Positions 2,890 through 63,689 of a DNA stretch of 64,000 bases are shown here, in pieces. The notes beneath the pieces were generated by a model that worked only from the letters and a program-made list of their open reading frames with translations, made no database searches and had not been told where the DNA came from. Both the position numbers and the translations under genes were made by a program. The stretch is from Octopus bimaculoides. Its lineage: Eukaryota. Each line of letters begins with the position of its first letter. The first letter of the stretch is position 1. The stretch lies in contig NC_068994.1 in NCBI RefSeq assembly GCF_001194135.2, positions 31,224,755 through 31,288,754 of the forward strand. Reading direction: 5' to 3'.

Positions 2890-5298
2890 GCAGTGAGCTG
2901 GACTGACCATTATCTAGTGCGTGGAAAAATAGTTTTTTTGATAATTTCTAAAAATTGACAGTTTGGTCCTGAGGTACCTAAAAAGTTGAATGTTGCAAAC
3001 TTTAAATTATCAAGCAACTTGCAAAGATTCCACGATGCTATAGAAAGTATCAATCTTGACCTAAACAATCTATGGGAAGATTTCAAAACAAAAGTATTTC
3101 AGGCTGCAAGTCCGTCAGTAGGATTTAAATCACATAAGTCCAGTAACTGGTTGTCAGAAAGATCAGCAGAAATTCATGATCTACTTTTAGAAAAACACAA
3201 CATAGGCAATACATTTCCTTCTCAGTCCTTGAACCCCAACTCAAGCGAAGCTAACAGAAAACTGAAAAGAAAAGTGTAGACTGCTCTAAGGAAGATTAAA
3301 CAGGATTGGTGGAATGATAGACCAAAAGGGGCACAAGAAACAGCTGATACAAATTATGCCAAGTGTTTGTACTCTTATGTTAAGGAGATATATGACCCAA
3401 AATCTTCTTCAATAGCTCCAGTGGGAACAGCAAATGGATGTTTTCTTCTGACTGACACCGCTTCTATTCATAAGTATTGGGTAGAACATTTTTCCGCACT
3501 TTTGAATAGACGATCATCCATGGACATGAGGACGATAGAAAAAATTGAACATCTTCCAGTAATAGAAGAAATAGCATTTGAACCAACTCTAAATGACGTT
3601 TATTTAGCTGTGAATAAGCTGAATAACAATAAGTCTCCAGGGTCTGATGGAATCTGTGCAGAAGTCTTGAAATATGGGGGTGACAAAATGTTTGAACTCT
3701 TAAATATATTAATTTGTCACTGTTGGAGAACTGAGAAAGTGCTTCAAGACCGGATTGATGCCATTTTGGTCTCTTTGTATAAATCGGGGCCAGAGGATCT
3801 GTGTGGTAATTTTCGTGGGATTTCGCTTTTGTCTGTGGTTGGAAAGGTACTTGCCCGAATTTTGTTAGAACGTTTAAATACCTTTATAGTTCCAAATATA
3901 GTGTCTGAATCTCAGTGTAGTTTTCGTTCCTCCAGGGGCACAGCTGATTGTATCTTTACTGTCATACAATTACAAGAAAAGTGCATTGAACAGTATCTTG
4001 CTCTATACCATTGCTTTGTTGATTTGAGCAAAGCATTTGACACTGTTAATCAAAATGCTCTGTGGCTAATTCTAAGGAAAATAGGTTGTCCAGAAAAATT
4101 TGTAAACATGATCAGGGCTTTGCATCAAGATATGAAAGCTAAAGTTAATTTTTATGGTAGGCTCTCTGAATCTTTTGCTGCTGAAAATGCAGTAAAGCAA
4201 GAAGATCTTGATGCACCCACCCTCTTTGCAATATATTTGTTGTTGTGTTGTCACATGCTTTTCAAAATTCTGAGGAGGGTATTTACAAAAAATATCAAAC
4301 AACTGGGAATGTTTTTTAATCTGACCAGACTGAAATTCAAAGCAAAGGTTTTTACTTCACTCATTAGGGAACTTTTGTATGCTAACGATTGCGATCTTGT
4401 CAGTCAGAAACAGGTCTGCAATCTCTTGTATCTGCATTTTACTCGGCTTGTGATGATTTTGGCTTGACCATCAAGTTGAAGAAAAAAACAGTTGTAATGC
4501 ATCAACCTGTGTGTGTGGTGCTATTTGTAACCGTACTAAAATTTTTGTTAAGAGCAAGTTACTTGGGACTGTCAATTCGTTCGTCTACCTTGGAAGCTCT
4601 GTTCAAAATGATGGAAATCTTGGTACAGAAATACAGCTGCGAATTCAAAGGGTAGCAAAAGCATTTGGTGCCTTGGAGTCACGCGTTTGATGCCAGCGAC
4701 ATATAAATAACAATACAAAGCTGGCTCTTTACAAATCATTTCTCTTACCATCCCTGTTATATTCCTGTGAAACTTGGACTTGTTATGAAAGGCATTTTAA
4801 ATTGTTAGAACAATTCCACCAAAAATGCCTTCATCGCATTTTCAAAATTAAAAGGAGTTCTTTTACTCCAAACACAGACGTCTTTGCATTTGCAGGCATC
4901 ACCACAATTAAAGCTATGATTTTGAGGAACCAATTGGGATGGTGTGGCCATAGTGTTCGAATGGCAGATGAACACATGCCGAAACAGCTGTGTTATAGTG
5001 AGCTTGCAGAGGGGAAACGCTATCGACGTATACCTAAAAAAAGGTTTAAGGACGGCATAAGGACTACTATGAAGTCACTGGGAATGGTTCCAGAGGATAT
5101 AGAAACCCTTGCTTCGGATCGATTTGGATGGCGAACAAAGGTGTGGAATGGAGTGAAAGCATCTGAAGAGGCCAGGATAACACAAATAAAGTTCAAAAGA
5201 GATCTAAGGAAAAATGTAACGATTGAGAAGGTGAATGACAATGACCTTTCTGTGTACACAGTCTGTGACAGATCATGCCTGTCTTTCGCTGGACTGAT
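2890..5298 (+). mobile_element. RTE-clade (BovB-like) LINE ORF2, degenerate: reverse transcriptase and C-terminus
   Basis: Motifs KSPGSDGI, NFRGISLLSVVGKVLARIL, FVDLSKAFDTV, ELLYAND (YADD), QLGWCGHSVRM and terminal CDRSCLSFAGL; contains stops and frameshifts. Confidence 0.93.
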
Positions 5299-5482
5299 GT
5301 TATCCAAGGGAAAGGCAAAGGCCAATACAGCTTGGCACAAGTAATGTCGCAACTCATTTTTACAGCTGAATTAACTGGAGCAACGTGAAATAAAGTGTCT
5401 TGCTCAAGAACACAACATGCTGCCCGGTCCGGGAATCGAACTCACAACCTCACGATCGTAAGCTCGACGCTCTAACCACTGA
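5299..5482 (-). mobile_element. SINE family T, 5' half
   Basis: Reverse complement of ~2408-2592; it truncates the RTE 3' end. Confidence 0.9.
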
Positions 5483-7333: not shown

Positions 7334-8490
7334 ATGAAAACTCACAGCTTATTTTGCTGGGTATGATGGAAAGTATCAGCTGTTCACAGCCGGCAGACTA
7401 AGGTGACATTTGTATATTGGTTATACTTCAAGAACCCTGCGGAGAATTCTTGCAGTTCCAAGCAATGCTGAATTCTGTAGGTGTTCTACTTTCACACTTG
7501 CACCAGTTTTTTCAGCCACGTCGGTAGTTGAGTGCGGATACTTCCAAGTGTACCAATTACTATTGGTATGACGTCTACTCTCTTCATTGACCACAAACTC
7601 CGTATTTCCCATTTCAAATCGTAATAGTACTTCAGTTTTTCTTTTTCTTTCACATTGATCCTGTTGTCACCGGAGCATGCTATGTCGATTATTATATATG
7701 TNNNNNNNNNNGTTCTTTCTTTTTTTTTATTCACCACAACAATGGCTGGTTTCCGATGTCTGGTCAGACGATCGCACTGGATCATTGTATCCCACAGGAT
7801 CTTGCAATTCTCATTTTCGGTGACTCCTGGAGTTTTCTCATACTACGTCTTTGCTCTTTGTAGGTCGGGATTTCCACAGAGCTCCCAATGGATCATTCTT
7901 GCCACATTGTCATGGCGTCTTTTGTATTCGCGTTGTGTCAATTTCGAGCATTTGCTAACGATGTGCCATACCGTTTCACCGCTCTCACCACACATTCTAC
8001 ATCTGTCGTTATCGGTAATGTTGTCTATTCTGCACTTCATATAGTTGATTCTTATCGCTTGTTTCTGAGTAGCGCATATGAGAGCTTCTGTATCTATCTT
8101 CAGGTCACCTCTCCTCATCCATAGCCACCGGTCCTCTGTATATGTCTTCGCGTTCACATCTCTTGCAAACTGACCGAACATTTTTCTTTTTTTCTTTTGT
8201 TCATTTCTTGTTTAAATTTTTCTTTTGTCATACAATTTTCAGTTTTGATGACGCCGGCCTTCTTCGTGTATTTCAACAGTGGCTGCACGGCATTTTCTAT
8301 ATACCACCCTAAGCTATTTTCCTCTGCTTCGATACAGTCCTGGCAACTGATCAACCTCTCCCACCCTTTCTTCTGGACAAGTTCAACTTATCGGTGGAAG
8401 GCTCCATGTACTGTTAACATTTTTTCTGGTCTTGGAATGCATTTTCTTCACTTCTCTTTTTTGCCATTTTATAATTCTCGTTCCATACCG
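7333..8490 (-). mobile_element. R4/Dong-like LINE, 5'-truncated, with 3' end
   Basis: Post-RT LISCQDCIEAEENSLGWY, CCHC motif CRMCGESGETVWHIVSKC, YKRRHDNVARMIHW, RLE region IIDIAC..DLKWEI..IPIVIGTLG, end motif LLGTARILRRVLEV* (stop 7421-7423), a short 3'UTR, then (TAA)n. Confidence 0.92.
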
Positions 8491-11305: not shown

Positions 11306-13620
11306 CTTTTTTTTTTATTACCTATTACAGGCGCACATAGAGGGGATAATACAATATGATCTGGGTGTCATATACAATCAAATGGAAATAAAAATTTTAA
11401 ATGACAAAATGAAAAATCGAATTGGACACAAAAGACAATTGCATACAATGAAGGACAATATGGGGTTTAAAAGACAGGAATGCTCCTACCCCACGAGCCC
11501 TGTCTTCTCTACCGACACCTTTGTAGCCTCTATGACGTGCTCACGCAGGGCCTTTCACTCCCAACTTACGTGCTACACGCGTCCATCTTTTTCTTTTTTT
11601 TTTTTAACATACTCACTGACAAACGCCTCCTTTCCAGTCACACCTTCCTTTTCGGGTGAAAAGGGAAAACATTCACCTGAGCGAGAGACACAGCTGTCTG
11701 TCACAATGCTTTTTATTCTCGACTTCCAAATCACTTCTCTCGCAATTGTTACTACTACGAGAAAACAATTCTTACCTTCTTCCGTAAAGAAATCTAGTGG
11801 GTTAATTTTTAGAATTGACTCAGAAGATAGCTGTACTCTTCTTCTCTATGACAACGGGTGTTCTGCATAAGTCCACACTTCTGATACACCCGGACACTGA
11901 ACAGTAGCGTGCAGGACGTTTCCACGTCCCGCTCGCATCTTGGACAGGGTGACGACCCAGGGTGGCCGTGTCTGGTGAGCTTATCCCGAACGAGTAGGGC
12001 TCCTCGGTAACACTGCCAGGCCAAAGACTTTTGGAAGTTATTCAGTGTCTTCCGCCCGAATGTGCTTCGGAACAGGCTGTCTAACTGATTATCATCGAGA
12101 CCCAGGGTCCTTCCCAGGGCATCATCATTTCCAGCCTCTACCAACCTACAATAATAAGCCGCGGTGGTACCGAAACCGCTGGCGTTGTCCTAGTTGCAGA
12201 ACTGGAGGAGAGCCTTGCGGCACCCAGTATACCAGGTACCCAACCATGATCTTCGACGAAAGCAGTTTTCTCTGCCACCAAAACTAGTAAAACTGGGGAA
12301 CATCCGTCTAGCGAGCGGAGACTAGATGCTTCAACCTCACCATATGTTTGAGCATCAACAGCCAAGGCATCCCTAACCCACACTTTAATGGCTTTTGACG
12401 GCACTCCAATTGCTAGTGCCCCAGTCTAGGTCTCGGCTTGATCCATGTACCAATGTCCGTTAAGGACTTTAACTGCGGGAGGTAGAAACAGGATTTTCTC
12501 AGAGCCAGTCAGGAGATACGAGAAGATTTGTAGACTGTCCAGCTTGGTCTCTGTAGCAACCATCACATGTATATCGTGTGATCTGAGGTCGTCGAGCAAA
12601 CAAGCCTGCTTCTACTTCGAACTCAGACCACGCACATTTAAACAACCAATGTTAAGTGAAGTCATTACAAAAAGCAAAGGTTCCATTTACCCTTTGACTG
12701 GAGAAGATGGAGCCGACCTCACCTTACGCGGGGCAGCCCACTCCTCCTTCTTCAGATAGTTGGGTAGATCCATAATATTCCAGATGGCCAAAGGATTCCT
12801 ATCCTTCAATTGCTTGTATAGGGTTTCCCCTATCCAGGCACATCTTTTTTTTTAAGTTCTTATGTAAAGGGTAAAGTTTTGTTGTGTGATGTGGTACGAT
12901 AATATCGTTTGTATATTTGTTCTGAGTATCATATTCAATTAGTATTGTCTTCTTTTTTTCGGGGACAGTTGGGCGGGGTCTTTTTTTTGTGTGGTGTTTC
13001 GTCTTGGTGTTTTGTAGGGGATATGAATGGGGATAGTACATGTGTACTTTTTCTCGCCACAGTGAACTCCCTCTCTGTCACTTCCATGGTGTCGACCAGG
13101 GGAGTAACACTTTCTACTTCTGGTGCCAATAATTCAAAGGGGGCGAGGTTTTGCTTTTGTGAGGGCTTGTGTGAGCAGGGGTTGGGTTTTTGGGGTGTCA
13201 TATTTCGAGGCCGGCACTGCAGAGCTGAGAGAGAGGGAGTTTTTGTTTGTGTCGGGGTTGGTTGAAGGTCCTGTGTCTGCACAGTTTTATCCTTTTCTAT
13301 TTTCTGTTCTCGCTTTTTCCTTTCTTCACAGTCGACATGAATGTNNNNNNNNNNNNNNNNNNNNNNNNNNNNNNNNNNNNNNNNNNNNNNNNNNNNNNNN
13401 NNNNNNNNNNNNNNNNNNNNNNNNNNNNNNNNNNNNNNNNNNNNNNNNNNNNNNNNNNNNNNNNNNNNNNNNNNNNNNNNNNNNNNNNNNNNNNNNNNNN
13501 NNNNNNNNNNNNNNNNNNNNNNNNNNNNNNNNNNNNNCCTCCCAGTTGTTTTCAAATAATAGAAGAGAAAAAATCTAAAACAGAAATTATAATTTCTGGT
13601 TTGGGTTTATTTTTTACATA
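11306..13620 (-). mobile_element. L1/Tx1-like LINE, RT-deleted and apparently chimeric (ORF1 remnant, APE N-terminus, ORF2 C-terminus, poly-A)
   Basis: Poly-A with AATAAA at ~11309-11320 (minus). zf-RVT-like KSLAWQCYRGALLVRDKL..CPRC..ET; GLGMPWL motif; ORF2 start MTSLNIGCLNVRGL..ETKL near 12665; low-complexity ORF1 at 12700-13345. Confidence 0.85.
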
Positions 13621-23776: not shown

Positions 23777-25027
23777 CATTAAGAATGAAATGTCCGATTT
23801 TCTTGTGCACTAAGTTTGACAGTTGTTAACTCTAATGTTTCATCCTGGCAATTCTTTGTTTTACAACATTGAAGAGTTACATCATCACTTTTCGAAATGC
23901 AATTCATAGTGTCTAATTATATTGTGAGTTTTTTCTTGTAAATCAATTTTTGTGAACCCACGGATAGATCAAAAAGTCATGTTGTTTATGAATATGAGTT
24001 CCATCATGGAACCAATGCATCCCAGACAGCACAAAGATGTGGCGAATGAGTGCATTGTACGTCGATGGTTTGAGAAGTTCCAGTCTGGTGACTTTACTCT
24101 TGAAATTCAGTCCCATGGTAGACCTGAGACCAAGGTGGATAATGATGAGCTGGAAACTGTAGTGGAAACAGATACATTTCAAACTACGCATGAGTTAGCA
24201 GCAAGGTTTGATGTTTCAATTCCAACTGTATTGGACTATCTGAAACAAATCAGCAAAGTAAAGAAGCTGGACAAGTGGGTACCACATAACTGAACATGCA
24301 TCAAATGACACGTCTTGAAACTTGTTATTCTTTGCTGTCATGGCTTAAAAACAAGCCATTTTTGCATCGTATTGTTACGTGTGATGAAAAATGGATTCTC
24401 CTCAACACTGGCAAGCATTCTGCACAGTAGTTGGATAGAGACAAAGTGCCAAAACACAATCCAAAGACAAATATTCACCAAAAAATGGTAATGGTGTCTG
24501 TTTGGTGGACCAGCACTGGTGTCATCCACTACAGCTTCATGAGACCTGTTAAGTCAGTTACAGCGGATGTATACATCAACCAACTGGATGAAATGATGAG
24601 TGAATTTGCAATTAAACAACCAAGATTGGTCAATAGAGACAGGCCTATTCTCTTGCAAGTCAATGCTCGACCACATTTTGCACAAAGAACGCTACTCAAG
24701 TTACAGGAACTTGGAAGTACTCTGTCATCCACCATAGTCACCAGACCTTGCACCAAGTGACTATCAAATTTTCCAGGCATTAGACAACTTTTTGCAAGGG
24801 AAAAACTTCATATCTGAAGAAGATGCAAAAACAGCCTTTCATGATTTCATCACCTCTTGCTCTTCAGAATTCTTCGCTGGTGGCATAAATAAGCTACCAA
24901 TAAAATTGCAACATTGTATTGATAATTTAGGTACATACTTTGATTAATTGCATTGCTTTTTTTGTTGAGATAAAGTAAAATAAACTTTCAGTTCAAAATT
25001 GGACATTTCGTTTTTAATGACCTGATA
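23769..25027 (+). mobile_element. Near-full-length mariner (Hsmar/Mos1-like), inactive, in PACRGL intron 2
   Basis: TIRs (t)aaggtcattaagaatgaaatgtcc / ggacatttcgtttttaatgacctgata; WVPH, VTCDEKWI, LLQVNARPH (catalytic D>V) and SPDLAPSDY-like motifs, with stops and frameshifts. Confidence 0.95.
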
Positions 25028-44599: not shown

Positions 44600-46581
44600 T
44601 AAAGGCTTTTTACCATGTCAAGTTCCCGTTTGTCCTATCTAACCTATCAAAGACTAAATCCATCTAATGTAAAAAGATGTTTTGTTCTATGATGCCGGTT
44701 GAGTCTTTCAGCAAATTTAGTACGAAACGGCATTCTTTATTTCATTGAAGTTCATACTCCCTTCCCCACCTTCTACCCATGTTCCTCTGCTTCTTTCTTT
44801 TATAGGTTCGCTGTTTCTTCTCTCTCAATCTCATGTTTGCTCTGTTTTAAAAATACTTCGTAATTAAAGTGCAGATGAGAGTGAAAATTAAATAACTTTA
44901 CGAATTATCACCTTAATGGAGAAGGAAGTAAACATTATATTAGTAAATAACATATTTCCAAAATTTCTTCAATAAATTCTCCTGTCAAACAAAGAAAAAT
45001 TCCATTGATCATTTCTCCTTGTACGTATGTGCGCGCGCGCTACAAAATATCAGGTGAGAAGAGGGCTAGTGCTTCTATACTAAACAATATGATAAAGATT
45101 TCGAGCAGTTTTGCTGGTAGGAAGTCAGCCCATAAAATACAACGTTCTGAAATTTAACTTTCCGAACTAAACTTCATTAAGCTCCTCCTTCTACTGGTCA
45201 GATTTCGTTAACGAACTATGAGCGTGCCCCCTCACCGAGTAATGAAGACAGTTAAAAATGAATAGACCTAGATAATATAACCTTAAATTGGAAAAGTGCG
45301 CGGTACGCTGTTAAATTCTTGTTGAAATGGGTCAGCAGCCAGGTTTTGATTCCCTTTTAGCTTACCTTATTATATTAATACCTGACAAAGGCTTGAAACG
45401 ACACAATCCACATTTTTCCTTATTTCATTAATTCTAATTATCACAATATTTCCAACAGGCATTGAAATGATAGTGATGGTGGCGGCGCGATGTAGACTGC
45501 CCCAAACTATCTACACCACCACTACTATAAAAGACAGACGAGTTATACACTTGTAAAAGAAAGAAAAAACATGAAAACTAGCCTCTCGACAGTTATTTTA
45601 TTTCGTTAGCAGTGTTAGTTTTGCTAACTTACCCTTTATTTGTTGTAGATTGGTAAGTGTAATAGGCCGGAAGTAAATTCTACATTGCTAGGTAGATTAT
45701 GTTAACAAAGTAGTCAATGTTAATTGTTATATATTACATTCACCTAGCGAGTTTGAAATGGTAAAAATTAATCATAAAGAAGCAAGACATATCGCTGAGA
45801 AAAAAAAATTATTACAAAACCCATTTCAGAATTTTATATTTCGTTTTTACTTAAGTTAATTATAAAATAAAGGAAATTAGATGGCGATCGAGAATAAAAG
45901 AATTAGAGTAAAGAACAAACATGGAGACGAAAAGGGGAAAACGGTAAGGGGAGAAAGAATAAAATACAGTGGAAGACAAATAGAGTAAATGAAGCGGGTG
46001 AACAGACAGATGGGTGAGGTAAGAAAATGAAGAGATGTGAAGAAAGATAAGCGCGAGTAAGGAACAAAAGCGGGAAAGATGATGTCAAAATGAGAGAGAG
46101 GGAGAGATTGAAGCTGAAACAAAAGGAAAAGGATGGGAAACGTAAGTAGAAAGGGGGACTTTTTCACCGCTTACACCGGGTCGCATCAAATTTTATCACC
46201 CGCAGACAATGGTACGGAGGAACTGGCGCTGTAGTAATTCGTTCTGCGACTACTTGGTGACGCGATCCTAGCTGACGCTTGGTTATCCCTCCCCCAACGT
46301 TGTGTTTGTCCTGGTCGGGACTGTTTATGGTGTGTCAGCGGGCCAGCAACCGACCGCAGCCAAACTGGCTCTCTTAGCAACGGCCCCGCCTCTCTGTAGC
46401 CGAAATACTAGTGAGTACTTACAATTAGTTCCTTCATTCTAACACATTCTCAGCAGCACGTCACAGTCGTTTCCTGCATGCATGTTTCCACTTAAATTAA
46501 GAAAGAAAAAAACAGAGGGAAGCAGTTAAAGAATATATATATATATACACACACATTAAAAGTACATGCACACACGCATAC

Positions 46582-46622
<41 letters not shown>

Positions 46623-47343
46623 NNNNNNNNNNNNNNNNNNNNNNNNNNNNNNNNNNNNNNNNNNNNNNNNNNNNNNNNNNNNNNNNNNNNNNNNNNNNNN
46701 NNNNNNNNNNNNNNNNNNNNNNNNNNNNNNNNNNNNNNNNNNNNNNNNNNNNNNNNNNNNNNNNNNNNNNNNNNNNNNNNNNNNNNNNNNNNNNNNNNNN
46801 NNNNNNNNNNNNNNNNNNNNNNNNNNNNNNNNNNNNNNNNNNNNNNNNNNNNNNNNNNNNNNNNNNNNNNNNNNNNNNNNNNNNNNNNNNNNNNNNNNNN
46901 NNNNNNNNNNNNNNNNNNNNNNNNNNNNNNNNNNNNNNNNNNNNNNNNNNNNNNNNNNNNNNNNNNNNNNNNNNNNNNNNNNNNNNNNNNNNNNNNNNNN
47001 NNNNNNNNNNNNNNNNNNNNNNNNNNNNNNNNNNNNNNNNNNNNNNNNNNNNNNNNNNNNNNNNNNNNNNNNNNNNNNNNNNNNNNNNNNNNNNNNNNNN
47101 NNNNNNNNNNNNNNNNNNNNNNNNNNNNNNNNNNNNNNNNNNNNNNNNNNNNNNNNNNNNNNNNNNNNNNNNNNNNNNNNNNNNNNNNNNNNNNNNNNNN
47201 NNNNNNNNNNNNNNNNNNNNNNNNNNNNNNNNNNNNNNNNNNNNNNNNNNNNNNNNNNNNNNNNNNNNNNNNNNNNNNNNNNNNNNNNNNNNNNNNNNNN
47301 NNNNNNNNNNNNNNNNNNNNNNNNNNNNNNNNNNNNNNNNNNN

Positions 47344-47375
<32 letters not shown>

Positions 47376-48100
47376 AAATACAAGTGTTTTCTTGAATGTG
47401 ATCATCCCTTCAAGAGATTAACATATCCTCTAATTAACTTTATATATACATATATATATGTATGTATATATACCCATTCGTATATCCATATTGAATCGAT
47501 GTATGTATTATATGCATGTGTATAAATAGTCATTATATAACTACATGCGTTTGTATGTTTTTGTATATACCCATGTACGTTTGCGTATGTATTCTGTTAC
47601 ATATAAATATTACTAAAGATCAATCTTTAAAGTTTATTTATAAACTGATTTGTGTGTATATAAATCTGTAGAGGAAGAGAGTGGTTAAAATTTTGTGGAG
47701 ACTATTGATTTATATAGATAAAAAAAATTTTCACACATAGAGCTGCAAAAGAGCGACTTTTAGGGTTTGCTTACCTGCTGAACGACAGTTTGTACTTTGT
47801 CACTAGTAGCGGATTGCGCCCGTGCTCGAAAGAGAATATTCTTCAGTCGCCGGATCCACTAAAAGGGTACCTCAGAACGTTATACTTCACAACGTCAATT
47901 AGCGGCAGGACTATAAAGGAAATTCTGCATTAGTTCGTCTCTAACCAGTCTTGCTACGAAATATATTGATGGAGTCCTTACTAGTATCCCGATGTCAATG
48001 AGTTACTAAATTAAGTATTTGAATTGTAGTCTTTATACTTACGTAGCTATATGCACACACAAAAGATTATCGTTGGGTTAAATAAATTACTTCTACTGTA
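44600..48100. promoter_or_regulatory. CpG-retaining region, probable promoter and non-coding first exon(s)
   Basis: By eye, far more CpG than the flanks. (GC)5 at 45031-45040, ETS-type CCGGAAGT at 45667-45674, CTTAGCAAC (RFX half-site-like) near 46372-46380, GC box CCCCGCC at 46384-46390, and splice-donor-like motifs on both strands. Confidence 0.5.
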
Positions 48101-48475
48101 GAATATATCTATAGGTTTTAGCCAATATTCTATGTGATACTAAGATATAAACATTTTGAATTTATGCACGCTATATTCTTGGACAGAAAAAGTGATGTGC
48201 TGCATAATCTGCATCCCGTACATCCCAAATATGTGTGATATATGAAAATTGGTTTCTTTCATTTATTCGAGCCCTTACAAATAACTAGTTTAAAAGCTGT
48301 CTCTTCATAATCAAAAACAGTGTCATTAACTGAAAATATCTCAACACAGTTCAAATTACTTCGATTGTCCCACTTTTTCTGTCCACTGTGGTGTTTGGAA
48401 TAAAGACAATGTGTTTATGTCTATCAGTTATTTAATATTGAGTACGTGTGTGTAATATAGTAATTGTATGTGTAG

Positions 48476-48530
<55 letters not shown>

Positions 48531-49075
48531 NNNNNNNNNNNNNNNNNNNNNNNNNNNNNNNNNNNNNNNNNNNNNNNNNNNNNNNNNNNNNNNNNNNNNN
48601 NNNNNNNNNNNNNNNNNNNNNNNNNNNNNNNNNNNNNNNNNNNNNNNNNNNNNNNNNNNNNNNNNNNNNNNNNNNNNNNNNNNNNNNNNNNNNNNNNNNN
48701 NNNNNNNNNNNNNNNNNNNNNNNNNNNNNNNNNNNNNNNNNNNNNNNNNNNNNNNNNNNNNNNNNNNNNNNNNNNNNNNNNNNNNNNNNNNNNNNNNNNN
48801 NNNNNNNNNNNNNNNNNNNNNNNNNNNNNNNNNNNNNNNNNNNNNNNNNNNNNNNNNNNNNNNNNNNNNNNNNNNNNNNNNNNNNNNNNNNNNNNNNNNN
48901 NNNNNNNNNNNNNNNNNNNNNNNNNNNNNNNNNNNNNNNNNNNNNNNNNNNNNNNNNNNNNNNNNNNNNNNNNNNNNNNNNNNNNNNNNNNNNNNNNNNN
49001 NNNNNNNNNNNNNNNNNNNNNNNNNNNNNNNNNNNNNNNNNNNNNNNNNNNNNNNNNNNNNNNNNNNNNNNNNNN

Positions 49076-49154
<79 letters not shown>

Positions 49155-49899
49155 ATCTATATCATTTATCTTTTACTTGATTCAGTCATTAGACTGCAGC
49201 TTGCTGGTATACCTCCTTGAAGAATTATTAGTCAAAGGAATCAACTCCAGTCCTTAATATTTTTTTAAACCTGGTACTTATTTTATCAGTACTTTTGCCA
49301 AACTACTAAGTTATGGGGGGACATAAACACACCAACACTAGTTATTAAGTGGTGGTCAGGGACTCTATCTACTATTAATTTGCTGTTTCATTAAAATTGT
49401 TTCGCAAAAATCCCCAAAGAATTATCTCTCTCCGCCTTGTGCTCTACCCTAGCACCGGCATTGTCTCTCTCTCCATTTCGATAACTACTTGCTTCTCCAA
49501 TCACTTACCTCCTCCTCCACCATCCCACTCTATATAAACCTGCTCTCTTGGATTCCTACTACATTTCAATAACCCCCACCAAAAGAATACAAACCCAGAA
49601 GATGTTGTTCAGATAAGGAATCTTGTGTGTGTTTTTTCAACTCAGTGCATCTACCACCTCTATTTCAGTGCAGATCATAATCCCCTCTTAGTTCTGTAAA
49701 CATAGTTTTCATCTTCTGTCTTAAAAACAAACGTAATTTCACACGAATACCCTTATCGTCACTTATTCATGCATCTATTTACTTTTATCACATTGTCAAT
49801 TATTCATTTCTCTAATTTTTTTGTCACAGATTGGCTGACCAAAGATTCTAAGAGTTCTAAATTCTATCTACTATAAATATGTCATTCCTAACACCAGTA

Positions 49900-51375
49900 A
49901 TGCTATTTTGCTGTTCAACCGCCCTCCAGCCCCCACCACTAGTACCGCAAGTCCCTATCCTCTGACAGCCTTCGTTGTCTCTCATTAACACTTCTAAAGG
50001 CTTAATGCCATCCCCACCTGCCACTTAGGATCTATCTCCTATGTAAGGTTGTGATCATATAGCGCATAAAAATGATGGTGTAGTGTATGCAGGTTGAAGG
50101 CTGTTTGGTTATGAATTCTGCCAAATGAGAGCTTTTGGCATCCCGGGGTCACACGGACACACACCCTCGGGGTTGGCACATTCAACGTGGGCATACTGAA
50201 AGGTAGGTCTGGTGAGATTGTTGAGGTGCTTGAACAGAGATGTGTAGATTTGTGCTGCATCCAAGAAGTAAGGTGGAGAGAAGGCTCTGCTAGGTTCCTC
50301 ACAGGCAAAGAACATAGATACAAGATCTTCTGGGCAGGGAACACTGACGGGGTCAGGGGCGTGGGTATATTTCTTGCAGAGAAATGGGTTGATAAGGTAA
50401 TCGAGGTAGTCAGAATCTGCGATAGAATACTTAAGATTAGATTAGTGCTACATAATGGGTTAGCAACCATTATCTCGGCTTATGCCCCTCAACCAGGGCT
50501 ACCTGATGGACAGAAAGACTGATTTTATGACGCCCTCTTGCTGACTACCTCATCAACGAATGACAGGGACCTTCTCTTTGTGGCTGGTGATTTCAATGGA
50601 CATGTTGGACAACATGCAGGGAGCTTCCATGGCATACATGGAGGTTATGGTTTTGGTTCCGGCAATGAGGAGGGAACCAGGCTGCTGGAGTTCTGCGATA
50701 CAAATGATATGGTTTGCAATACTAACTTCAGGAAACCTGCCAGTCACCTAGTCACCTACCGATCTGGCAGACACACTAGTCAGATTGACTGCATCTTCAC
50801 CAGGAAAAGGGAAAGATGGCTACTTATAAATACCAAAACCTTCCCAGTTGAAGAATGTACCCCACAACATAGATTAGTAGTTAACGACTTCAGGATCAGG
50901 GCTAAATGGATGCCCAGAAGACGACCAGCATGGAGAAGGGTCTGGAAGCTTAAAGATCCTGCGAATGGACAGAGATTTTGAGACATATTACTCAAAGCTT
51001 TTGATGAAATAGACGGGGCTATAGCATCACATGACATGGAAGACAACTGGAGGTTTCCACGGGACAATCTGCTGAGGGCCACTGACCAGATCTGTCGATG
51101 GTGCAAAGTCCCTGACCCAAGGTAACGTGGTGGTGGAACAGTGTTGTTGATAGGGCCATTAGGGAAAAGAAACAGGCTTGGAAGGACTGGAAGAACGGTG
51201 GTAGCAGGGAATCGTTACAGACTGCAAAAAGGGAAGCTAGGAGACGGGTTTATTTAGCCAGTGGAGAAGCAGATAAGAAAAAATTTGCCAATGTTCTGCA
51301 CCGTGAGGACCAAAGTCTTGAGGTATTCCATGCTGCGAGACAGTGTGTGAGAGAGAATCATGACGTTGTAGGAGA
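49900..51375 (+). mobile_element. RTE LINE 5' part (5'UTR and APE endonuclease), 3'-truncated
   Basis: NVGILKGRSGEIV..CCIQEVRW, IISAYAPQ, VAGDFNGHVG, SQIDCI, QHRLVV; few stops. Confidence 0.93.
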
Positions 51376-54480: not shown

Positions 54481-55685
54481 TACGAGGGTCAGTTGAAAAG
54501 TATGTTGACTGATCAAGATACTCTCATGGAACGTCACCAAATTAGGTTTATTTTACAACTTAGTCCCCCCTTGTGGTTCACTTCTTCCATTGGTGTTATA
54601 GTGCTTAGATCCCATTGGCGAAGGAGCTTTCATCCTGCTGGTCAAATAAGTTATCAACAGCAGATATGACATCATCATCACTGCAATACTGGTTCCCAGC
54701 CAAGTAATTTTTCATTTTGAGGAATAGATGATTGTCAGATGGGGCCAAATCAGAAGAATAGGGAAACTGATCAACCAATTCAAAGCTACAGTCACATACA
54801 GCAGCCATTGAAACCATTGATGTCTGGAGCATTATCCTGATGGGACAAAACTTCTTTTGTAACTGTTTTAGAAAATTGGCATAGTACTTTACATTGCTCA
54901 TATGGCCCTTTTGAAATAGTCAATAAACACAGTGCCTTGTATATCCCAAAATACTGAGGCCATCACCTTCCCTGCCGATGAAACAACTTTGACCTTCTAT
55001 GGAGCATATCATGAGAGGTGTTTCCACTGCATAAATTGTCTCTTTATCTCTGGTTCAAAGTGCTAAACCCAACACTCATCCTGGATTAGGAAATGTTCAA
55101 GGAAAGCAACTGAATTTAGCTCAAACAATATCAGATTTTCCCATGATATGATCAGCCTGGTGCACTTTTGATCAAGTGTCAGAAGACATGGCACCCACTG
55201 AGTAGAAACCTTCATTATGCCAAGTTCATTGTGCAGAATAGTCTCAATTCTCTCACAAGATATGCTAATAGCACTGGTGAACACAATCCAGGTTTTCTTC
55301 AGTGGTTGCAGTTGCAGGATGTCCAGACCTTGGGTCTTCAAGATTCTTCCTTTCCCTCCTGAATTCATCTGCCCACTCTTGCACAGTTTATAAACTGGAG
55401 TGTCATCCCCTAATGTAGCCACCATGTCAGCATGAATGTTCTGGGAGGCTAAACCCTTTTTCTGCAGGTACTTGATAACATGACGATGCCATATTTTGTC
55501 CATTTTCAAGAGAGGTTGCTACTAATTTTGAAATCTTCTTTTAAGAGTCACATGTCAGTTTACCTAGAAAGAAACAATGCAGTTATTTATAAGAATAGTT
55601 GAAATTTATGCAAGCAAGATTTCACAGCGCTCCTTCATCTCTCTCTTTCATAGTCAGCCTATGAACTTTTCAGCCCACCCTTGTA
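54481..55685 (-). mobile_element. mariner transposon with both TIRs, internally deleted
   Basis: TA-flanked TIRs tacgagggtcagttgaaaagt / acttttcagcccacccttgta; HRHVIKYL, WVPCLL, QDECWV and PYSSDLAPSD motifs. Confidence 0.93.
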
Positions 55686-60168: not shown

Positions 60169-60359
60169 TATTCTCAAAACCATCATGATTTTAAATTTAA
60201 AATTAAGTTGTAAGAAGTGTACAGTCAGCATAGATTAGGATCTATTTAAATATGTACACAAGTAAACACACACATATTTCAACTGTAATCTTTATTTATT
60301 TATTTTCATTGCATTTATCCAGTCATTTCATAATTTTTTGTTCTTTTGTCTTTTCAAAG

Positions 60360-60506
60360 GTTGCTGGACATTCTCAACCAGGTGATGTTTTTGCTGTGAT
60401 TTCAAAATGGGATCTTGCATTCTCTCATCTGTTACTGCATCATTGAACACTTCAACATCAGAATTCAACCCAACAGAAACTAAAAGATTATTTCGGTAGT
60501 AAGAAT
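60360..60506 (+). other. Spliced 5' leader of the zinc-finger gene (acceptor AG at 60358-60359)
   Basis: Long polypyrimidine tract ..ttttgtcttttcaaag|G; in-frame TGA at 60444-60446 upstream of the ATG. Confidence 0.7.
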
Positions 60507-61907
60507 ATGGACTCGCTAGCAGCCGACACCCAGCAAATGCCTTGCCCAACTGCAGACTTATCAGTAACAGCTTCCCAGAAGCCGTACTCTGGGGTTACTT
60601 CCCCTCTAGTATCACCCGATGTTCCAACTTGTTATTCACAGTTACCCCCCTTGCCTGTATTGCCATCTGATGGCACTCCACCGGATAACTGCCAAAAATT
60701 AAACTCGGGGAACAATTCAACCCGAGTACAAGTGAAAACAGATCCGGGGGAGATGACTAACCCAGAAAGTACATCGACCAAAAAAAAGTCATCGACAAAA
60801 AGCACTGAAAAACCTTTCAGTTGCACCATGTGTGGGCAGCACTTTGCACGTAAAGACACTCTGCAGTGTCATAAGCGGACACATACTGGCGAGAGACCAT
60901 ACTCTTGCGATTCGTGTCCGTTACATTTTGCCCGACGCGATACGCTGCAGTGCCACCGTCGAACTCATAGCGGTGAGCGTAGGTTCATTTGTGAAGTGTG
61001 CCTGCAGAAGTTTGCTCGCAGGGACACACTCCACTGCCACCAGCGGACTCACAGCGGTGACAAGCCATTCAGCTGTGACTTGTGCATTCAGAAATTCGCC
61101 CGACGTGACACCCTGCTCTGTCATAGACGAACACATTCTGGTGAGAAACCGTTCGTGTGTCAGTTTTGCGGGAAAAGGTTTGCACGCACAGACAAGCTGC
61201 ACCGTCACAAGCGTACCCATCTTCGAGGTAATCCCACCACAACACCTGGCTCTCATTATAATCAGAATACAGCATCTAACTTAAGTGCTGGTAACAACCT
61301 GCATTGCAACAACAGCAGCTGCAACAGTAGCAACTGCAGCCTTAGTGCTATGCAAGGTCCTTGCAATGACAACTGCCTAAATTACAACAATAGCTCAGGT
61401 GCAAATACACCATGTACGAGTGCACTCTGTAATAGCTCAATGGGTTGCACCTACCACTGTAATGGTAGTGGATGCAATCAGGTAATTCCTGCAAATGTGC
61501 AGTGCAATGTATCAGGGTGCAATGGAATTTCATGTAACAGTAACATTTCCAACAGTGTGCCATGCTGCCCAAACATGATCAACACAAGCGGTTCTTGTGG
61601 AAACAGCAACATGTGCCTCACTTCCAACAGCCCCCAGTGCCATGACAGAAGTTCTGCCTCTGCCAGCACAGACACTACCACTGCCTCTTCTGTGGCACCC
61701 ACCTCTCTTCCTGCTGCTTCAGGTTGTGGTGGTCAGACCGTCGTGCTTTCCCACCATTCATCACAGCCTACAGCTGTAATGACAACTTCAGCAGCACCAA
61801 TGTTCACGACCAACTCCAACAACAACCTCACCAGCACAGGAACACTACAGAAACCTGATCGGTTCCAAGCCAATTCAAGCAACCAAATATGGCAGATATT
61901 CTACTGA
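60507..61907 (+). CDS. C2H2 zinc-finger protein (5 fingers, 466 aa) with Cys/Asn/Ser-rich C-terminal region
   Basis: Intact 1401-nt ORF; five C-x2-C-x12-H-x3-H fingers (60816-61220) with TGERP/SGE(D)KP-type linkers; basic KKK patch before finger 1. Confidence 0.96.
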   Translation: MDSLAADTQQMPCPTADLSVTASQKPYSGVTSPLVSPDVPTCYSQLPPLPVLPSDGTPPDNCQKLNSGNNSTRVQVKTDPGEMTNPESTSTKKKSSTKSTEKPFSCTMCGQHFARKDTLQCHKRTHTGERPYSCDSCPLHFARRDTLQCHRRTHSGERRFICEVCLQKFARRDTLHCHQRTHSGDKPFSCDLCIQKFARRDTLLCHRRTHSGEKPFVCQFCGKRFARTDKLHRHKRTHLRGNPTTTPGSHYNQNTASNLSAGNNLHCNNSSCNSSNCSLSAMQGPCNDNCLNYNNSSGANTPCTSALCNSSMGCTYHCNGSGCNQVIPANVQCNVSGCNGISCNSNISNSVPCCPNMINTSGSCGNSNMCLTSNSPQCHDRSSASASTDTTTASSVAPTSLPAASGCGGQTVVLSHHSSQPTAVMTTSAAPMFTTNSNNNLTSTGTLQKPDRFQANSSNQIWQIFY

Positions 61908-62267
61908 ATAGAGAACCAATTCAAATGTGGCAACTGAACACTTTCAACCTCATCAGATATCAGATTGGCTATTCTTCACCTATTACTTGATGCATCAGAT
62001 ACACTTCCTGTTTTGTTTTCAACTGTTGGAATATGGTTTGTGAGCACTGCATGTTCCAGTGTCTCAAAGGTTTTCAGATACTGGGGACTGGCAGCAGTGC
62101 TACACACCTATTTGCATTTTCTGTTTCTATGCAAATTGGTTCAAAAATCACATGGACACACGTGAATATACACATGAGTGTGTGTGCGTATGTTTATATA
62201 TACATATATATATGTCTGTGTGTATATGTATGTATGTATGTGTATGTACATATATATATATATATAT

Positions 62268-62303
<36 letters not shown>

Positions 62304-63180
62304 NNNNNNNNNNNNNNNNNNNNNNNNNNNNNNNNNNNNNNNNNNNNNNNNNNNNNNNNNNNNNNNNNNNNNNNNNNNNNNNNNNNNNNNNNNNNNNNNN
62401 NNNNNNNNNNNNNNNNNNNNNNNNNNNNNNNNNNNNNNNNNNNNNNNNNNNNNNNNNNNNNNNNNNNNNNNNNNNNNNNNNNNNNNNNNNNNNNNNNNNN
62501 NNNNNNNNNNNNNNNNNNNNNNNNNNNNNNNNNNNNNNNNNNNNNNNNNNNNNNNNNNNNNNNNNNNNNNNNNNNNNNNNNNNNNNNNNNNNNNNNNNNN
62601 NNNNNNNNNNNNNNNNNNNNNNNNNNNNNNNNNNNNNNNNNNNNNNNNNNNNNNNNNNNNNNNNNNNNNNNNNNNNNNNNNNNNNNNNNNNNNNNNNNNN
62701 NNNNNNNNNNNNNNNNNNNNNNNNNNNNNNNNNNNNNNNNNNNNNNNNNNNNNNNNNNNNNNNNNNNNNNNNNNNNNNNNNNNNNNNNNNNNNNNNNNNN
62801 NNNNNNNNNNNNNNNNNNNNNNNNNNNNNNNNNNNNNNNNNNNNNNNNNNNNNNNNNNNNNNNNNNNNNNNNNNNNNNNNNNNNNNNNNNNNNNNNNNNN
62901 NNNNNNNNNNNNNNNNNNNNNNNNNNNNNNNNNNNNNNNNNNNNNNNNNNNNNNNNNNNNNNNNNNNNNNNNNNNNNNNNNNNNNNNNNNNNNNNNNNNN
63001 NNNNNNNNNNNNNNNNNNNNNNNNNNNNNNNNNNNNNNNNNNNNNNNNNNNNNNNNNNNNNNNNNNNNNNNNNNNNNNNNNNNNNNNNNNNNNNNNNNNN
63101 NNNNNNNNNNNNNNNNNNNNNNNNNNNNNNNNNNNNNNNNNNNNNNNNNNNNNNNNNNNNNNNNNNNNNNNNNNNNNNNN

Positions 63181-63243
<63 letters not shown>

Positions 63244-63689
63244 ACTCACACACACACACACTCACTCACACATGCGCACACACAAAAAGATAGGTAGATA
63301 TATTGGCAAGTAAAATTTTTTACCCTTCCTTTGCCCTATTGTTTTGTCAAACACACAAATATAAGAATCACCACTCACTGCATATTGTTCCATCAAACAA
63401 TGTTATCAAACATCTTCATATGCAGCACAGTGTGCAGTCAGACATTGTTATGAAACTTCAGCCACCCCTGTTCCATCAGGCACCATTGTAAACCTTTTCC
63501 CCAACCCCCACTACATTTACTGTACTTTCAAACACCATTATATGAGTAAATAAAAAAAAAATAACAAAACAAAATGACTCCTACTTGTATCGTCAGACAT
63601 GCTTTAAGAAGACAAAGAACTCAAGGTATAACTCACAATTACAGTGATAATTTGGTGATGGAATTCTGGATTTGTATATATGTATAGCC

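What the first reader, a model, noticed from the sequence alone, without database searches (positions are those of the whole stretch)
60816..61220. Zinc-finger array with four iterated R-x-D-T-L-x-C helices: predicted reader of tandem CpG triplets
Seen: helix positions -1..+6 are RKDTLQC, RRDTLQC, RRDTLHC, RRDTLLC and RTDKLHR. Codons differ widely at synonymous sites between fingers (e.g. cgtaaagacactctg / cgacgcgatacgctg / cgcagggacacactc / cgacgtgacaccctg), so the identity reflects selection, not recent duplication. Known: Arg-1/Asp+2 specify G, Thr+3 favours C or T, and engineered RTDTLRD, RNDTLTE and RSDKLVR modules bind ACG, CCG and GGG (from memory); Arg-G contacts underlie methyl-CpG readout in Kaiso/ZFP57/KLF4. 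Inference: the site is about 5'-GNG-(NCG)4-3', so the protein may be a CpG-repeat/CpG-island or methylation-sensitive reader in an AT-rich, gene-body-methylated genome. Cys at +6 next to the first His ligand is unusual and may add redox or metal sensitivity.
Basis: partly seen in the sequence, partly recalled or inferred. Interest (0 to 1): 0.7.

Follow-up and report, generated by a model that had tools for sequence, protein, structure and literature searches.

The report
Conserved octopus five-finger zinc-finger gene
This is a real, single-exon Octopus bimaculoides gene for a five-finger C2H2 zinc-finger protein whose four near-identical DNA-reading helices are frozen by selection in two other distant species, so it is very probably an uncharacterised sequence-specific DNA-binding factor, but its proposed CpG or methyl-CpG reading remains an untested prediction.

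Summary
Nt 60816-61220 encode five canonical C2H2 fingers with helices RKDTLQC, RRDTLQC, RRDTLHC, RRDTLLC and RTDKLHR. They lie in a 466-aa single-exon ORF (60507-61907, +) on Octopus bimaculoides chromosome CM046614.1.

The fingers are old. Between-finger nucleotide identity is 54-67%. Two distant orthologues (P0069, P0121; species not named) keep the same array finger for finger. Synonymous sites are saturated (pS 0.76-0.91) against pN 0.03-0.14. All 20 base-contact columns (-1,+2,+3,+6) are invariant, against 28 of 85 variable other columns (p=0.0009). Cys at +6 occurs in about 0.6% of other fingers.

The gene has no effector domain, is not in a ZNF cluster, and has disordered termini. It belongs to an unnamed ZNF family (probably cephalopod) rich in R(R/K)DTLQx helices.

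The predicted site, about 5'-GGG-(K)CG-(K)CG-(K)CG-(K)CG-3', rests on engineered modules (RTDTLRD=ACG, RNDTLTE=CCG, RSDKLTE=CGG).

Methyl-CpG reading is not supported by known determinants: characterised readers pair the Arg with Glu or Asp, and this protein has Thr.

Verdict: a new member of a known kind, with an unusual homotypic Cys+6 array and moderate interest.

The parts
60507..61907 (+). Complete coding sequence (466 aa plus stop) of the zinc-finger gene, apparently one coding exon
   Evidence: ORF list. An in-frame TGA at 60444-60446 lies upstream of the first ATG. The exact product is recorded as a called gene on O. bimaculoides GCA_001194135.2 chromosome CM046614.1.
60624..60665 (+). 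N-terminal short conserved motif, PTC(Y/F)..LP..P(V/L)(L/I)P, aa 40-53, inside a region predicted disordered
   Evidence: P40, T41, C42, P47 and P50 are invariant in the three-species alignment. pLDDT is below 50 for aa 1-101. A similar C(Y/F)-x-P/L motif is seen by eye in paralogues P0045, P0084, P0029 and P0076.
60765..60815 (+). Basic Ser/Thr/Lys-rich stretch (ESTSTKKKSSTKSTEKP) just before finger 1. It may be a nuclear-localisation or DNA-backbone-contact segment (inferred).
   Evidence: Translation. TRF finds an 18-nt unit repeated 1.9 times at 60766-60801.
60816..60884 (+). Finger 1, FSCTMCGQHFARKDTLQCHKRTH; helix codons 60849-60869 (RKDTLQC)
   Evidence: The orthologues have RRDTLQC.
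60900..60968 (+). Finger 2, YSCDSCPLHFARRDTLQCHRRTH; helix codons 60933-60953 (RRDTLQC)
   Evidence: The helix is identical in both orthologues.
60984..61052 (+). Finger 3, FICEVCLQKFARRDTLHCHQRTH; helix codons 61017-61037 (RRDTLHC)
   Evidence: The orthologues have RRDTLRC. The only helix difference is +5, His CAC (61032-61034) against Arg CGC.
61068..61136 (+). Finger 4, FSCDLCIQKFARRDTLLCHRRTH; helix codons 61101-61121 (RRDTLLC)
   Evidence: The orthologues have RRDTLQC. 19 of 23 residues match a finger of paralogue P0068.
61152..61220 (+). Finger 5, FVCQFCGKRFARTDKLHRHKRTH; helix codons 61185-61205 (RTDKLHR)
   Evidence: The orthologues have RTDKLQR.
61293..61661 (+). Octopus-only in-frame Cys/Asn/Ser-rich low-complexity insertion in the tail (aa 263-385; 18 Cys, 26 Asn, 25 Ser)
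   Evidence: Composition. Absent from P0069 and P0121. A 15-nt TGCAACAACAGCAAC unit repeats at 61305-61338. Predicted disordered.
61845..61904 (+). Conserved C-terminal motif LQKPDRFQANSSNQIWQIFY, a possible partner-docking peptide (inferred)
   Evidence: K449, D451, F453, A455, N456, N459, Q460, W462, Q463, I464 and F465 are invariant in three species. AF2 places a short helix at the extreme C-terminus, at low confidence.

Best explanation
The region is the DNA-binding domain of a solitary, single-coding-exon Octopus bimaculoides gene. The gene encodes a 466-aa classical C2H2 zinc-finger protein with no recognisable effector domain.

Shown here:
- There are five canonical fingers joined by TGEKP-type linkers.
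- The flanks are predicted disordered and carry short conserved N- and C-terminal peptides.
- The same five-finger array is kept, finger for finger, in two other deeply diverged species.
- The four base-contact positions of every finger are invariant.

Inferred:
- The protein binds double-stranded DNA in the canonical wrap-around mode. Finger 5 (RTDKLHR) would read GGG at the 5' end. Fingers 4 to 1 (R-1, D+2, T+3, C+6) would each read an xCG triplet.
- Arg-1 would hold the 3' G and Thr+3 would sit over the middle C (or T).
- The 5' base would be set mainly by the cross-strand Asp+2 of the neighbouring finger, which favours G or T, because Cys+6 cannot hydrogen-bond like Arg.
- The predicted site is about 5'-GGG-KCG-KCG-KCG-KCG-3', a period-3 CpG tract that is rare in this CpG-depleted genome.
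- The protein would act as a sequence-specific transcriptional regulator that recruits partners through its conserved terminal peptides.

Open: whether it distinguishes methylated from unmethylated CpG.

Sub-confidences: DNA-binding C2H2 factor under purifying selection about 0.85; site of the GGG-(NCG)4 type about 0.4; methylation-dependent binding about 0.15.
For: - Canonical ligand spacing, hydrophobic core and linkers are present in all five fingers.
- Pfam zf-H2C2_2 scores 75.2 bits against a cutoff of 40, and zf-C2H2_4 scores 44 against 27.
- AF2 predicts five beta-beta-alpha units at pLDDT 60-81, with helices starting at position +1, and disordered termini.
- Orthologues P0069 and P0121 share helices RRDTLQC, RRDTLQC, RRDTLRC, RRDTLQC and RTDKLQR.
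- In the ZF region, pN/pS is 0.116/0.855, 0.139/0.908 and 0.028/0.762 for the three species pairs.
- Contact columns vary in 0 of 20 cases. Other non-structural columns vary in 28 of 85 (p=0.0009), and non-contact helix columns in 8 of 25 (p=0.005). This is the pattern expected if positions -1, +2, +3 and +6 touch bases.
- Positional orthology of the fingers holds across species.
- Engineered modules with the same R-1/D+2/T+3/L+4 bind ACG and CCG, and RSDKLTE binds CGG.
- The cross-strand contact from position 2 is described in PMC4330361.
Against: - There are no binding, expression or localisation data.
- Code-based motif prediction fails for a large share of natural ZF proteins.
- Thr+3 can also accompany T, and Cys+6 has no established base preference.
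- Long arrays often use only a subset of their fingers.
- No site matching (CGN)3CG was found in the 64-kb window beyond chance: one 1-mismatch hit, and 10 of 100 shuffles do as well. One window says little either way.
- The taxa of the two orthologues are not given by the tools.
- Non-cephalopod orthologues could not be excluded, because poly-ZNF proteins swamped the homology list.
Confidence: 0.5

Rival explanations
1. Same protein and same binding mode, but Thr+3 reads thymine. The site would be a period-3 TpG/CpA tract, such as GGG-(KTG)4, or the protein would bind TpG and 5mCpG interchangeably through hydrophobic contact of Thr+3 (and Cys+6) with the C5 methyl group.
For: Small or hydrophobic residues at +3 (Ala, Ser, Thr, Val) are classically associated with T as well as C (recognition-code knowledge, from memory). 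[quoted passage not shown] Kaiso-family fingers bind both mCpG and TpG sites (PMC6222495).
Against: The only two verified modules with R-1/D+2/T+3 target xCG, not xTG. There are no data for this protein.
Confidence: 0.2
2. A methylation-dependent reader: the array binds preferentially to methylated period-3 CpG tracts in methylated gene bodies.
For: Arg at -1 with Asp at +2 is the guanine-holding unit used by all known 5mCpG-reading fingers. The host genome has gene-body methylation. The Thr methyl group could pack on the 5mC methyl group (inference).
Against: Known readers need an adjacent acidic residue (Glu for 5mC, Asp for C) to sense cytosine status. This protein has Thr at +3 in all four fingers. 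[quoted passage not shown] No experiment has been done.
Confidence: 0.12
3. Cys+6 is a regulatory thiol rather than a base-reading residue. Four solvent-exposed cysteines on the DNA-contact face would make DNA binding switchable by oxidation or by soft metals. The octopus-only Cys-rich tail might add to this.
For: Cys+6 is rare (0.6%) yet invariant in four fingers in three species. The octopus tail carries 18 further Cys. Redox-sensitive cysteines in DNA-contact surfaces are known in other transcription-factor classes such as AP-1 and NF-kB p50 (from memory).
Against: The canonical His+7 ligand is intact in every finger, so Cys+6 is not needed for zinc binding. The Cys-rich tail is absent from both orthologues. 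Invariance is explained equally well by a base- or shape-reading role.
Confidence: 0.08
4. It is one of the fast-evolving, transposon-tracking ZNFs of the cephalopod expansion, or a decaying duplicate, and the repeated helices have no particular meaning.
For: O. bimaculoides has about 1450 C2H2 genes (PMC12513265). The window is full of retroelement debris. The exact protein is absent from the large protein collection.
Against: The ORF is intact, with conserved ends. Contact residues are invariant across saturated synonymous divergence. No ZNF cluster and no second copy occur in the 64 kb. Pfam found no domain other than the zinc fingers.
Confidence: 0.05

Closest known systems
Unnamed ZNF family (probably cephalopod), represented by O. 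bimaculoides 'zinc finger protein 431' (P0029) and unnamed Logan/ENA proteins P0021, P0052, P0068, P0045, P0084 and P0076
   Same: The best per-finger matches all fall in this family, at 15-19 of 23 residues. An example is CDLCIQKFARR in finger 4. The family shares recurrent R(R/K)DTLQx helices, a last finger of xTDKLxR type, an N-terminal C(Y/F) motif and a C-terminal ..WQ(L/I) end.
   Different: The paralogues have 8-13 fingers that alternate RxDTL-type helices with Q-1 types (QRDYLQI, QRDKLQI), and they carry Ile, Val, Arg or Lys at +6. This gene has only five fingers, four of them homotypic, all with Cys at +6.
Engineered (Barbas-type) xCG modules RTDTLRD (ACG) and RNDTLTE (CCG), plus RSDKLTE (CGG)
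   Same: They carry identical residues at -1 (Arg), +2 (Asp), +3 (Thr or Lys) and +4 (Leu). This gives the only experimental precedent for the triplets read.
   Different: The modules have Asp or Glu at +6, which sets the 5' base. This protein has Cys. The modules were selected in a fixed Zif268/Sp1-type context, not in a homotypic natural array.
Zif268/Egr1 and WT1 GCG-reading fingers (RSDELTR type)
   Same: They have Arg-1 buttressed by Asp+2 on the 3' G of a CpG, a cross-strand Asp+2 contact, and canonical linkers. PDB relatives were retrieved by sequence.
   Different: They have Glu at +3 and Arg at +6, and three or four heterotypic fingers.
Methyl-CpG-reading C2H2 proteins (Kaiso/ZBTB33, ZFP57, KLF4, CTCF)
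   Same: They use an Arg to hold the G of (m)CpG.
   Different: They pair the Arg with Glu or Asp to sense cytosine status, and that residue is missing here. They read one or two CpGs rather than four in register. No homology was found beyond the generic finger.

Membership tests
Classical (Krueppel-type) C2H2 zinc-finger array | C-x2-C-x12-H-x3-H ligand spacing with a conserved F/Y..C..C...F.....L..H...H core in each unit | tested here: met
   Five units match exactly.
Classical (Krueppel-type) C2H2 zinc-finger array | Profile match above curated thresholds | tested here: met
   zf-H2C2_2 scores 75.2 bits (cutoff 40) and zf-C2H2_4 scores 44 (cutoff 27). The single-finger model zf-C2H2 scores 20, below its cutoff of 25.2.
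Classical (Krueppel-type) C2H2 zinc-finger array | Seven-residue TGEKP-type linkers between fingers | tested here: met
   The linkers are TGERPY, SGERRF, SGDKPF and SGEKPF, and are conserved in the orthologues.
Classical (Krueppel-type) C2H2 zinc-finger array | Beta-beta-alpha fold | tested here: met
   AF2 predicts two strands plus a helix for each of the five units, at pLDDT 60-81. This is a prediction only.
Classical (Krueppel-type) C2H2 zinc-finger array | Zinc-dependent, sequence-specific DNA binding | not testable with these tools
   Indirect support only: base-contact columns vary in 0 of 20 cases against 28 of 85 elsewhere.
Methyl-CpG-reading C2H2 fingers (Kaiso/ZFP57/KLF4/Egr1 type) | Arg that makes a bidentate contact with the G of CpG | tested here: met
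   Arg at -1, buttressed by Asp+2, is present in all five fingers. This is a sequence-level test only.
Methyl-CpG-reading C2H2 fingers (Kaiso/ZFP57/KLF4/Egr1 type) | Acidic residue (Glu for 5mC, Asp for C) placed on the cytosine next to that Arg | tested here: not met
   Position +3 is Thr in fingers 1-4 and Lys in finger 5. The requirement is as stated in PMC11514455.
Methyl-CpG-reading C2H2 fingers (Kaiso/ZFP57/KLF4/Egr1 type) | Measured preference for methylated over unmethylated DNA | not testable with these tools
   Needs EMSA or methyl-SELEX.
Effector-domain poly-ZNFs that track transposons (KRAB/SCAN/BTB/ZAD types) | N-terminal effector domain | tested here: not met
   Pfam finds only finger models. 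The N-terminus is predicted disordered.
Effector-domain poly-ZNFs that track transposons (KRAB/SCAN/BTB/ZAD types) | Tandem gene clusters and rapid turnover of contact residues | tested here: not met
   No other finger-coding sequence occurs in the 64 kb. Contact residues are invariant across saturated dS.
R(R/K)DTL ZNF family, probably cephalopod (P0029 group) | Family-typical fingers (CIQKFAR(R/K), R(R/K)DTLQx helices, terminal xTDKLxR finger) | tested here: met
   The best finger matches fall in this family at 15-19 of 23 residues.
R(R/K)DTL ZNF family, probably cephalopod (P0029 group) | Alternation with Q-1 fingers (QRDYLQI or QRDKLQI) and 8-13 fingers | tested here: not met
   The array has only five fingers, and none has Gln at -1.
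R(R/K)DTL ZNF family, probably cephalopod (P0029 group) | Shared non-finger motifs (N-terminal ..C(Y/F).P.LP, C-terminal ..WQ(L/I)) | tested here: inconclusive
   The resemblance is seen by eye. A profile of the C-terminal 70 aa retrieved only the P0069 cluster from 1.84 billion representatives.
Engineered xCG-binding modules (RTDTLRD, RNDTLTE) | R-1, D+2, T+3 and L+4, with an acidic +6 that sets the 5' base | tested here: inconclusive
   Positions -1, +2, +3 and +4 are identical. Position +6 is Cys rather than Asp or Glu. The comparison bears on 'works like', not on membership.

The most novel reading that the evidence does not exclude
The array is a conserved cephalopod reader of period-3 CpG tracts. 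Its Thr+3/Cys+6 surface, which lacks the usual acidic residue, would distinguish 5mC (or T) from C by hydrophobic packing and might be switched by thiol chemistry. That would be a previously undescribed, acid-free mode of cytosine-status reading, in an invertebrate with gene-body methylation.
Probability: 0.08. Interest if true: 0.7.

Novelty: new member of a known kind. Interest (0 to 1): 0.33.

Why it matters
Cephalopods carry well over a thousand C2H2 genes, and almost none has a known binding site or function.

This gene is a tractable exception. It is small, encoded by a single exon and solitary in the genome, and it is conserved far beyond the lineage-specific expansions. Its recognition surface is so regular that the predicted site (four CpGs in register after a GGG) is simple to test.

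If the prediction holds, it would give a defined CpG-tract-binding factor in a mosaic-methylated invertebrate. It would also give a natural test of what Cys at +6 and Thr at +3 do in base or methyl recognition.

If the prediction fails, the gene is still a clean example of a deeply conserved homotypic finger array.

Tried and rejected
1. Full-length homology search. 6206 hits were found, but the 120 listed were almost all long poly-ZNFs whose summed scores outrank true orthologues. Only P0069 and a few family paralogues were useful. A short non-cephalopod orthologue scoring under about 300 bits would have been hidden.

2. Search with the octopus N- and C-terminal parts only: nothing at E<=10.

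3. The same search with the P0069 termini: only P0121 was found.

4. Full HMMER search with a profile of the C-terminal 70 aa against 1.84 billion representatives: only the P0069 cluster.

5. Exact look-up of the octopus protein in the 15-billion-protein collection: absent. Cluster members of P0069 (P0122, P0123) are near-identical variants of one species.

6. Species of SRR25158129 and SRR27666065: not given by the tools and not found in the literature.

7. Literature search for the helix strings: no paper.

8. The Kaiso structure paper was not held, and a search for Kaiso residue names found nothing. I therefore do not use my recollection of Cys/Thr methyl contacts in Kaiso as evidence.

9. 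The supplement of the B1H survey was not held, so there is no empirical triplet profile for the R/D/T/C core.

10. Scan of the window for (CGN)3CG: one 1-mismatch hit, not above chance.

11. Considered and rejected:
- Recent duplication or gene conversion.
- KRAB-like transposon-tracking ZNF.
- An upstream extension of the ORF, which an in-frame TGA excludes.
- Cys+6 as a substitute zinc ligand, because His+7 is intact in all fingers and species.
Full report
**1. The observation**

Window 60507-61907 (+) is an uninterrupted 466-aa ORF. An in-frame TGA at 60444-60446 precedes its first ATG. The coding sequence is therefore most simply a single exon. A pyrimidine tract followed by AG near 60358 could be the acceptor of a non-coding 5' exon; that is by eye only.

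A regular-expression scan finds exactly five C-x2-C-x12-H-x3-H units. They lie at 60816-60884, 60900-60968, 60984-61052, 61068-61136 and 61152-61220. The helices at -1..+6 are RKDTLQC, RRDTLQC, RRDTLHC, RRDTLLC and RTDKLHR.

Between fingers, amino-acid identity is 11-17 of 23 but nucleotide identity only 54-67%. Only 4-8 of the identical residues share a codon.

As a background, I used 1419 fingers from 119 unrelated poly-ZNF hits. Cys at +6 occurs 8 times (0.6%) and the R/D/T/C contact set once.

**2. Where it is and what surrounds it**

The exact product is recorded as a called gene on Octopus bimaculoides assembly GCA_001194135.2, chromosome CM046614.1. It is not in the 15-billion-protein collection.

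The rest of the 64 kb is AT-rich (GC 0.37). It contains assembly gaps flanked by TA/TG microsatellites and non-LTR retroelement debris. One RVT_1 match at 3367-4464 is clear. The endonuclease and zf-RVT matches are weak.

tblastn with the finger array finds no other finger-coding sequence in the window. The gene is therefore solitary here and not part of a ZNF cluster.

**3. Anatomy of the protein**

Pfam finds only finger models: zf-H2C2_2 at 75.2 bits (cutoff 40) and zf-C2H2_4 at 44 bits (cutoff 27). No other domain family was detected.

AlphaFold2, run on the three-species alignment, predicts five beta-beta-alpha units (pLDDT 60-81) with helices beginning at position +1. Residues 1-101 and 241-466 have pLDDT below 50 and are likely disordered.

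The linkers are TGERPY, SGERRF, SGDKPF and SGEKPF. These are the canonical type that goes with contiguous major-groove wrapping.

**4. Relatives**

The first homology search was swamped by long poly-ZNF proteins. It still yielded P0069, a 410-aa protein from a Logan contig of SRR25158129. A search with the non-finger parts of P0069 then found P0121, from SRR27666065.

Both proteins have five fingers with helices RRDTLQC, RRDTLQC, RRDTLRC, RRDTLQC and RTDKLQR. Both share the N-terminal PTC(Y/F) motif and the C-terminal ..NQ(I/L)WQIF(Y) end. P0122 and P0123 are variants of P0069 from the same species.

Their coding DNA was recovered as L001 and L003. In the 140-codon finger region:

| Pair | pN | pS |
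|---|---|---|
| octopus vs P0069 | 0.116 | 0.855 |
| octopus vs P0121 | 0.139 | 0.908 |
| P0069 vs P0121 | 0.028 | 0.762 |

Synonymous sites are saturated in every pair, while replacement changes are few.

Each octopus finger is most similar to the finger at the same position in the other species. The homotypic array therefore predates these splits and has not been homogenised.

Across the three species, all 20 base-contact columns (-1, +2, +3, +6 in five fingers) are invariant. By comparison, 28 of 85 other non-structural columns vary (Fisher p=0.0009), and 8 of 25 non-contact helix columns vary (p=0.005). That is the signature expected if these positions read bases.

I infer that they are other, distantly related cephalopods.

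**5. Family**

The nearest individual fingers all belong to a group of unnamed Logan or ENA proteins plus O. bimaculoides 'zinc finger protein 431' (P0029), at 15-19 of 23 identical residues.

Those paralogues have 8-13 fingers. Their fingers alternate R(R/K)DTLQ(I/V/R/K) helices with Q-1 helices such as QRDYLQI or QRDKLQI. They end in ..Y(L/M/T)WQL and carry an N-terminal C(Y/F) motif.

The gene is thus a short, homotypic offshoot of a ZNF family that is probably cephalopod. Its distinguishing marks are the loss of the Q-type fingers and Cys at +6.

A profile of the C-terminal 70 aa found nothing outside the P0069 cluster among 1.84 billion representatives. I could not exclude a diverged non-cephalopod orthologue, because such a protein would have been hidden.

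O. bimaculoides has about 1450 C2H2 genes (PMC12513265). This gene is one of them, and no paper mentions its helices.

**6. How it probably works**

RTDTLRD is used for ACG (PMC12196555). RNDTLTE is used for CCG and RSDKLTE for CGG (PMC7317221).
- With R-1, D+2 and T+3, fingers 1-4 are therefore best guessed to read xCG.
- Finger 5 (R-1, K+3, R+6) is best guessed to read GGG.
- Every finger has Asp+2, which makes the cross-strand contact into the neighbouring triplet (described in PMC4330361). That contact classically favours G or T there; this preference is from memory of Zif268 work.
- Cys+6 cannot make the hydrogen bonds of Arg, Lys, Gln or Glu. The 5' base of each triplet is then probably set by the neighbour's Asp+2.
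- This gives about 5'-GGG-KCG-KCG-KCG-KCG-3'.

This is inference. Code-based predictions agree significantly with experiment for only about 60% of natural proteins. Thr+3 can also go with T, and arrays may use only some of their fingers.

**7. Methylation**

Octopus does have sparse methylation. [quoted passage not shown]

The characterised 5mCpG-reading fingers combine the guanine-holding Arg with an acidic residue that senses cytosine status: Glu for 5mC, Asp for C (PMC11514455; PMC6222495). This protein has Thr there. It does not carry the known determinant and should not be filed as a member of that class.

A hydrophobic Thr/Cys contact with a C5 methyl group (5mC or T) remains possible but is untested.

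**8. Side observations on sequence evolution**

CpG observed/expected is 0.95 in the finger region, 0.31 in the rest of the ORF and 0.38 in the window.

Of the 28 CpGs in the finger region, 16 are the first two bases of CGN Arg codons. There, both deamination products are amino-acid changes: Arg to Cys, Trp or stop, or Arg to His or Gln. Those 16 are therefore likely protected by purifying selection.

The same logic suggests an origin for Cys+6. TGY is one CpG transition away from CGY. Arg is the +6 residue of finger 5 (CGT) and of RRDTLQR fingers in the paralogues. This is a hypothesis only.

The octopus-specific His at +5 of finger 3 (CAC) against Arg (CGC) in both orthologues is the complementary CpG transition. 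Alternatively, it could be an A-to-I recoding site. Neither can be tested here.

**9. Verdict**

- The selection inference is strongly supported.
- The binding-site prediction is reasonable but unverified.
- The methyl-reader and CpG-island reading and the redox idea are speculative.
- This is a new, uncharacterised member of a known kind (a classical C2H2 DNA-binding factor) with an unusually regular, deeply conserved recognition surface.

Noticed in passing
window 61293-61661 (aa 263-385 of the ORF): An in-frame, octopus-only low-complexity insertion with 18 Cys, 26 Asn and 25 Ser. C-N and C-x3-5-C spacings recur, and there is a 15-nt TGCAACAACAGCAAC repeat at 61305-61338. The insertion is absent from both orthologues and is predicted disordered. 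It may be repeat expansion read in a Cys/Asn frame. A metal or redox role is conceivable.
   Followed up: partly
window 61845-61904; L001 1424-1483; L003 ~1546-1602: The extreme C-terminus, ..(K)xD(R/K)FxANxxNQ(I/L)WQIF(Y), is conserved in three species. Paralogues end in ..Y(L/M/T)WQL. It looks like a short docking peptide of unknown partner. A profile search found it nowhere else.
   Followed up: partly
window 60852-60854 (AAA, Lys +1 of finger 1); 61032-61034 (CAC, His +5 of finger 3); 61200-61202 (CAC, His +5 of finger 5): The octopus has A where the orthologues have G at two of these sites: Lys against Arg, and His CAC against Arg CGC. At the third site the orthologues have Gln. These are either CpG-transition substitutions or candidate A-to-I recoding sites. 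RNA-seq is needed.
   Followed up: no
window 60804-61229 compared with the rest of the ORF: CpG observed/expected is 0.95 in the finger-coding region, against 0.31 in the rest of the ORF and 0.38 in the window. Of the 28 CpGs, 16 are in CGN Arg codons. Cys+6 codons (TGY) are one CpG transition from Arg (CGY).
   Followed up: partly
window 3367-5344 (+), 7843-8178 (-), 11809-12141 (-), 50187-50981 (+): Fragments of non-LTR retrotransposons. One RVT_1 match is clear (E 1e-15). The Exo_endo_phos_2 and zf-RVT matches are weak and fall below the curated cutoffs.
   Followed up: partly
window 23952-24290 (+) and 55063-55506 (-): ORFs that look like pieces of a mariner/Tc1-type transposase N-terminus by eye. 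They have no Pfam hit at E<=0.001.
   Followed up: partly
window, many places, e.g. 62170-63290, 46560-47400, 48450-49250: Runs of N (assembly gaps) are bordered by (TA)n and (TG/CA)n microsatellites. ORF callers read through these as long artefactual ORFs.
   Followed up: no
L001 224-253 (upstream of the called start of P0069): An in-frame upstream ATG gives MDGNKQEIHC..., as used by variant P0122. This matches the MDGDKQ start of P0121 and the MDS start of the octopus protein, so the true start of P0069 is probably 10 codons further upstream.
   Followed up: partly
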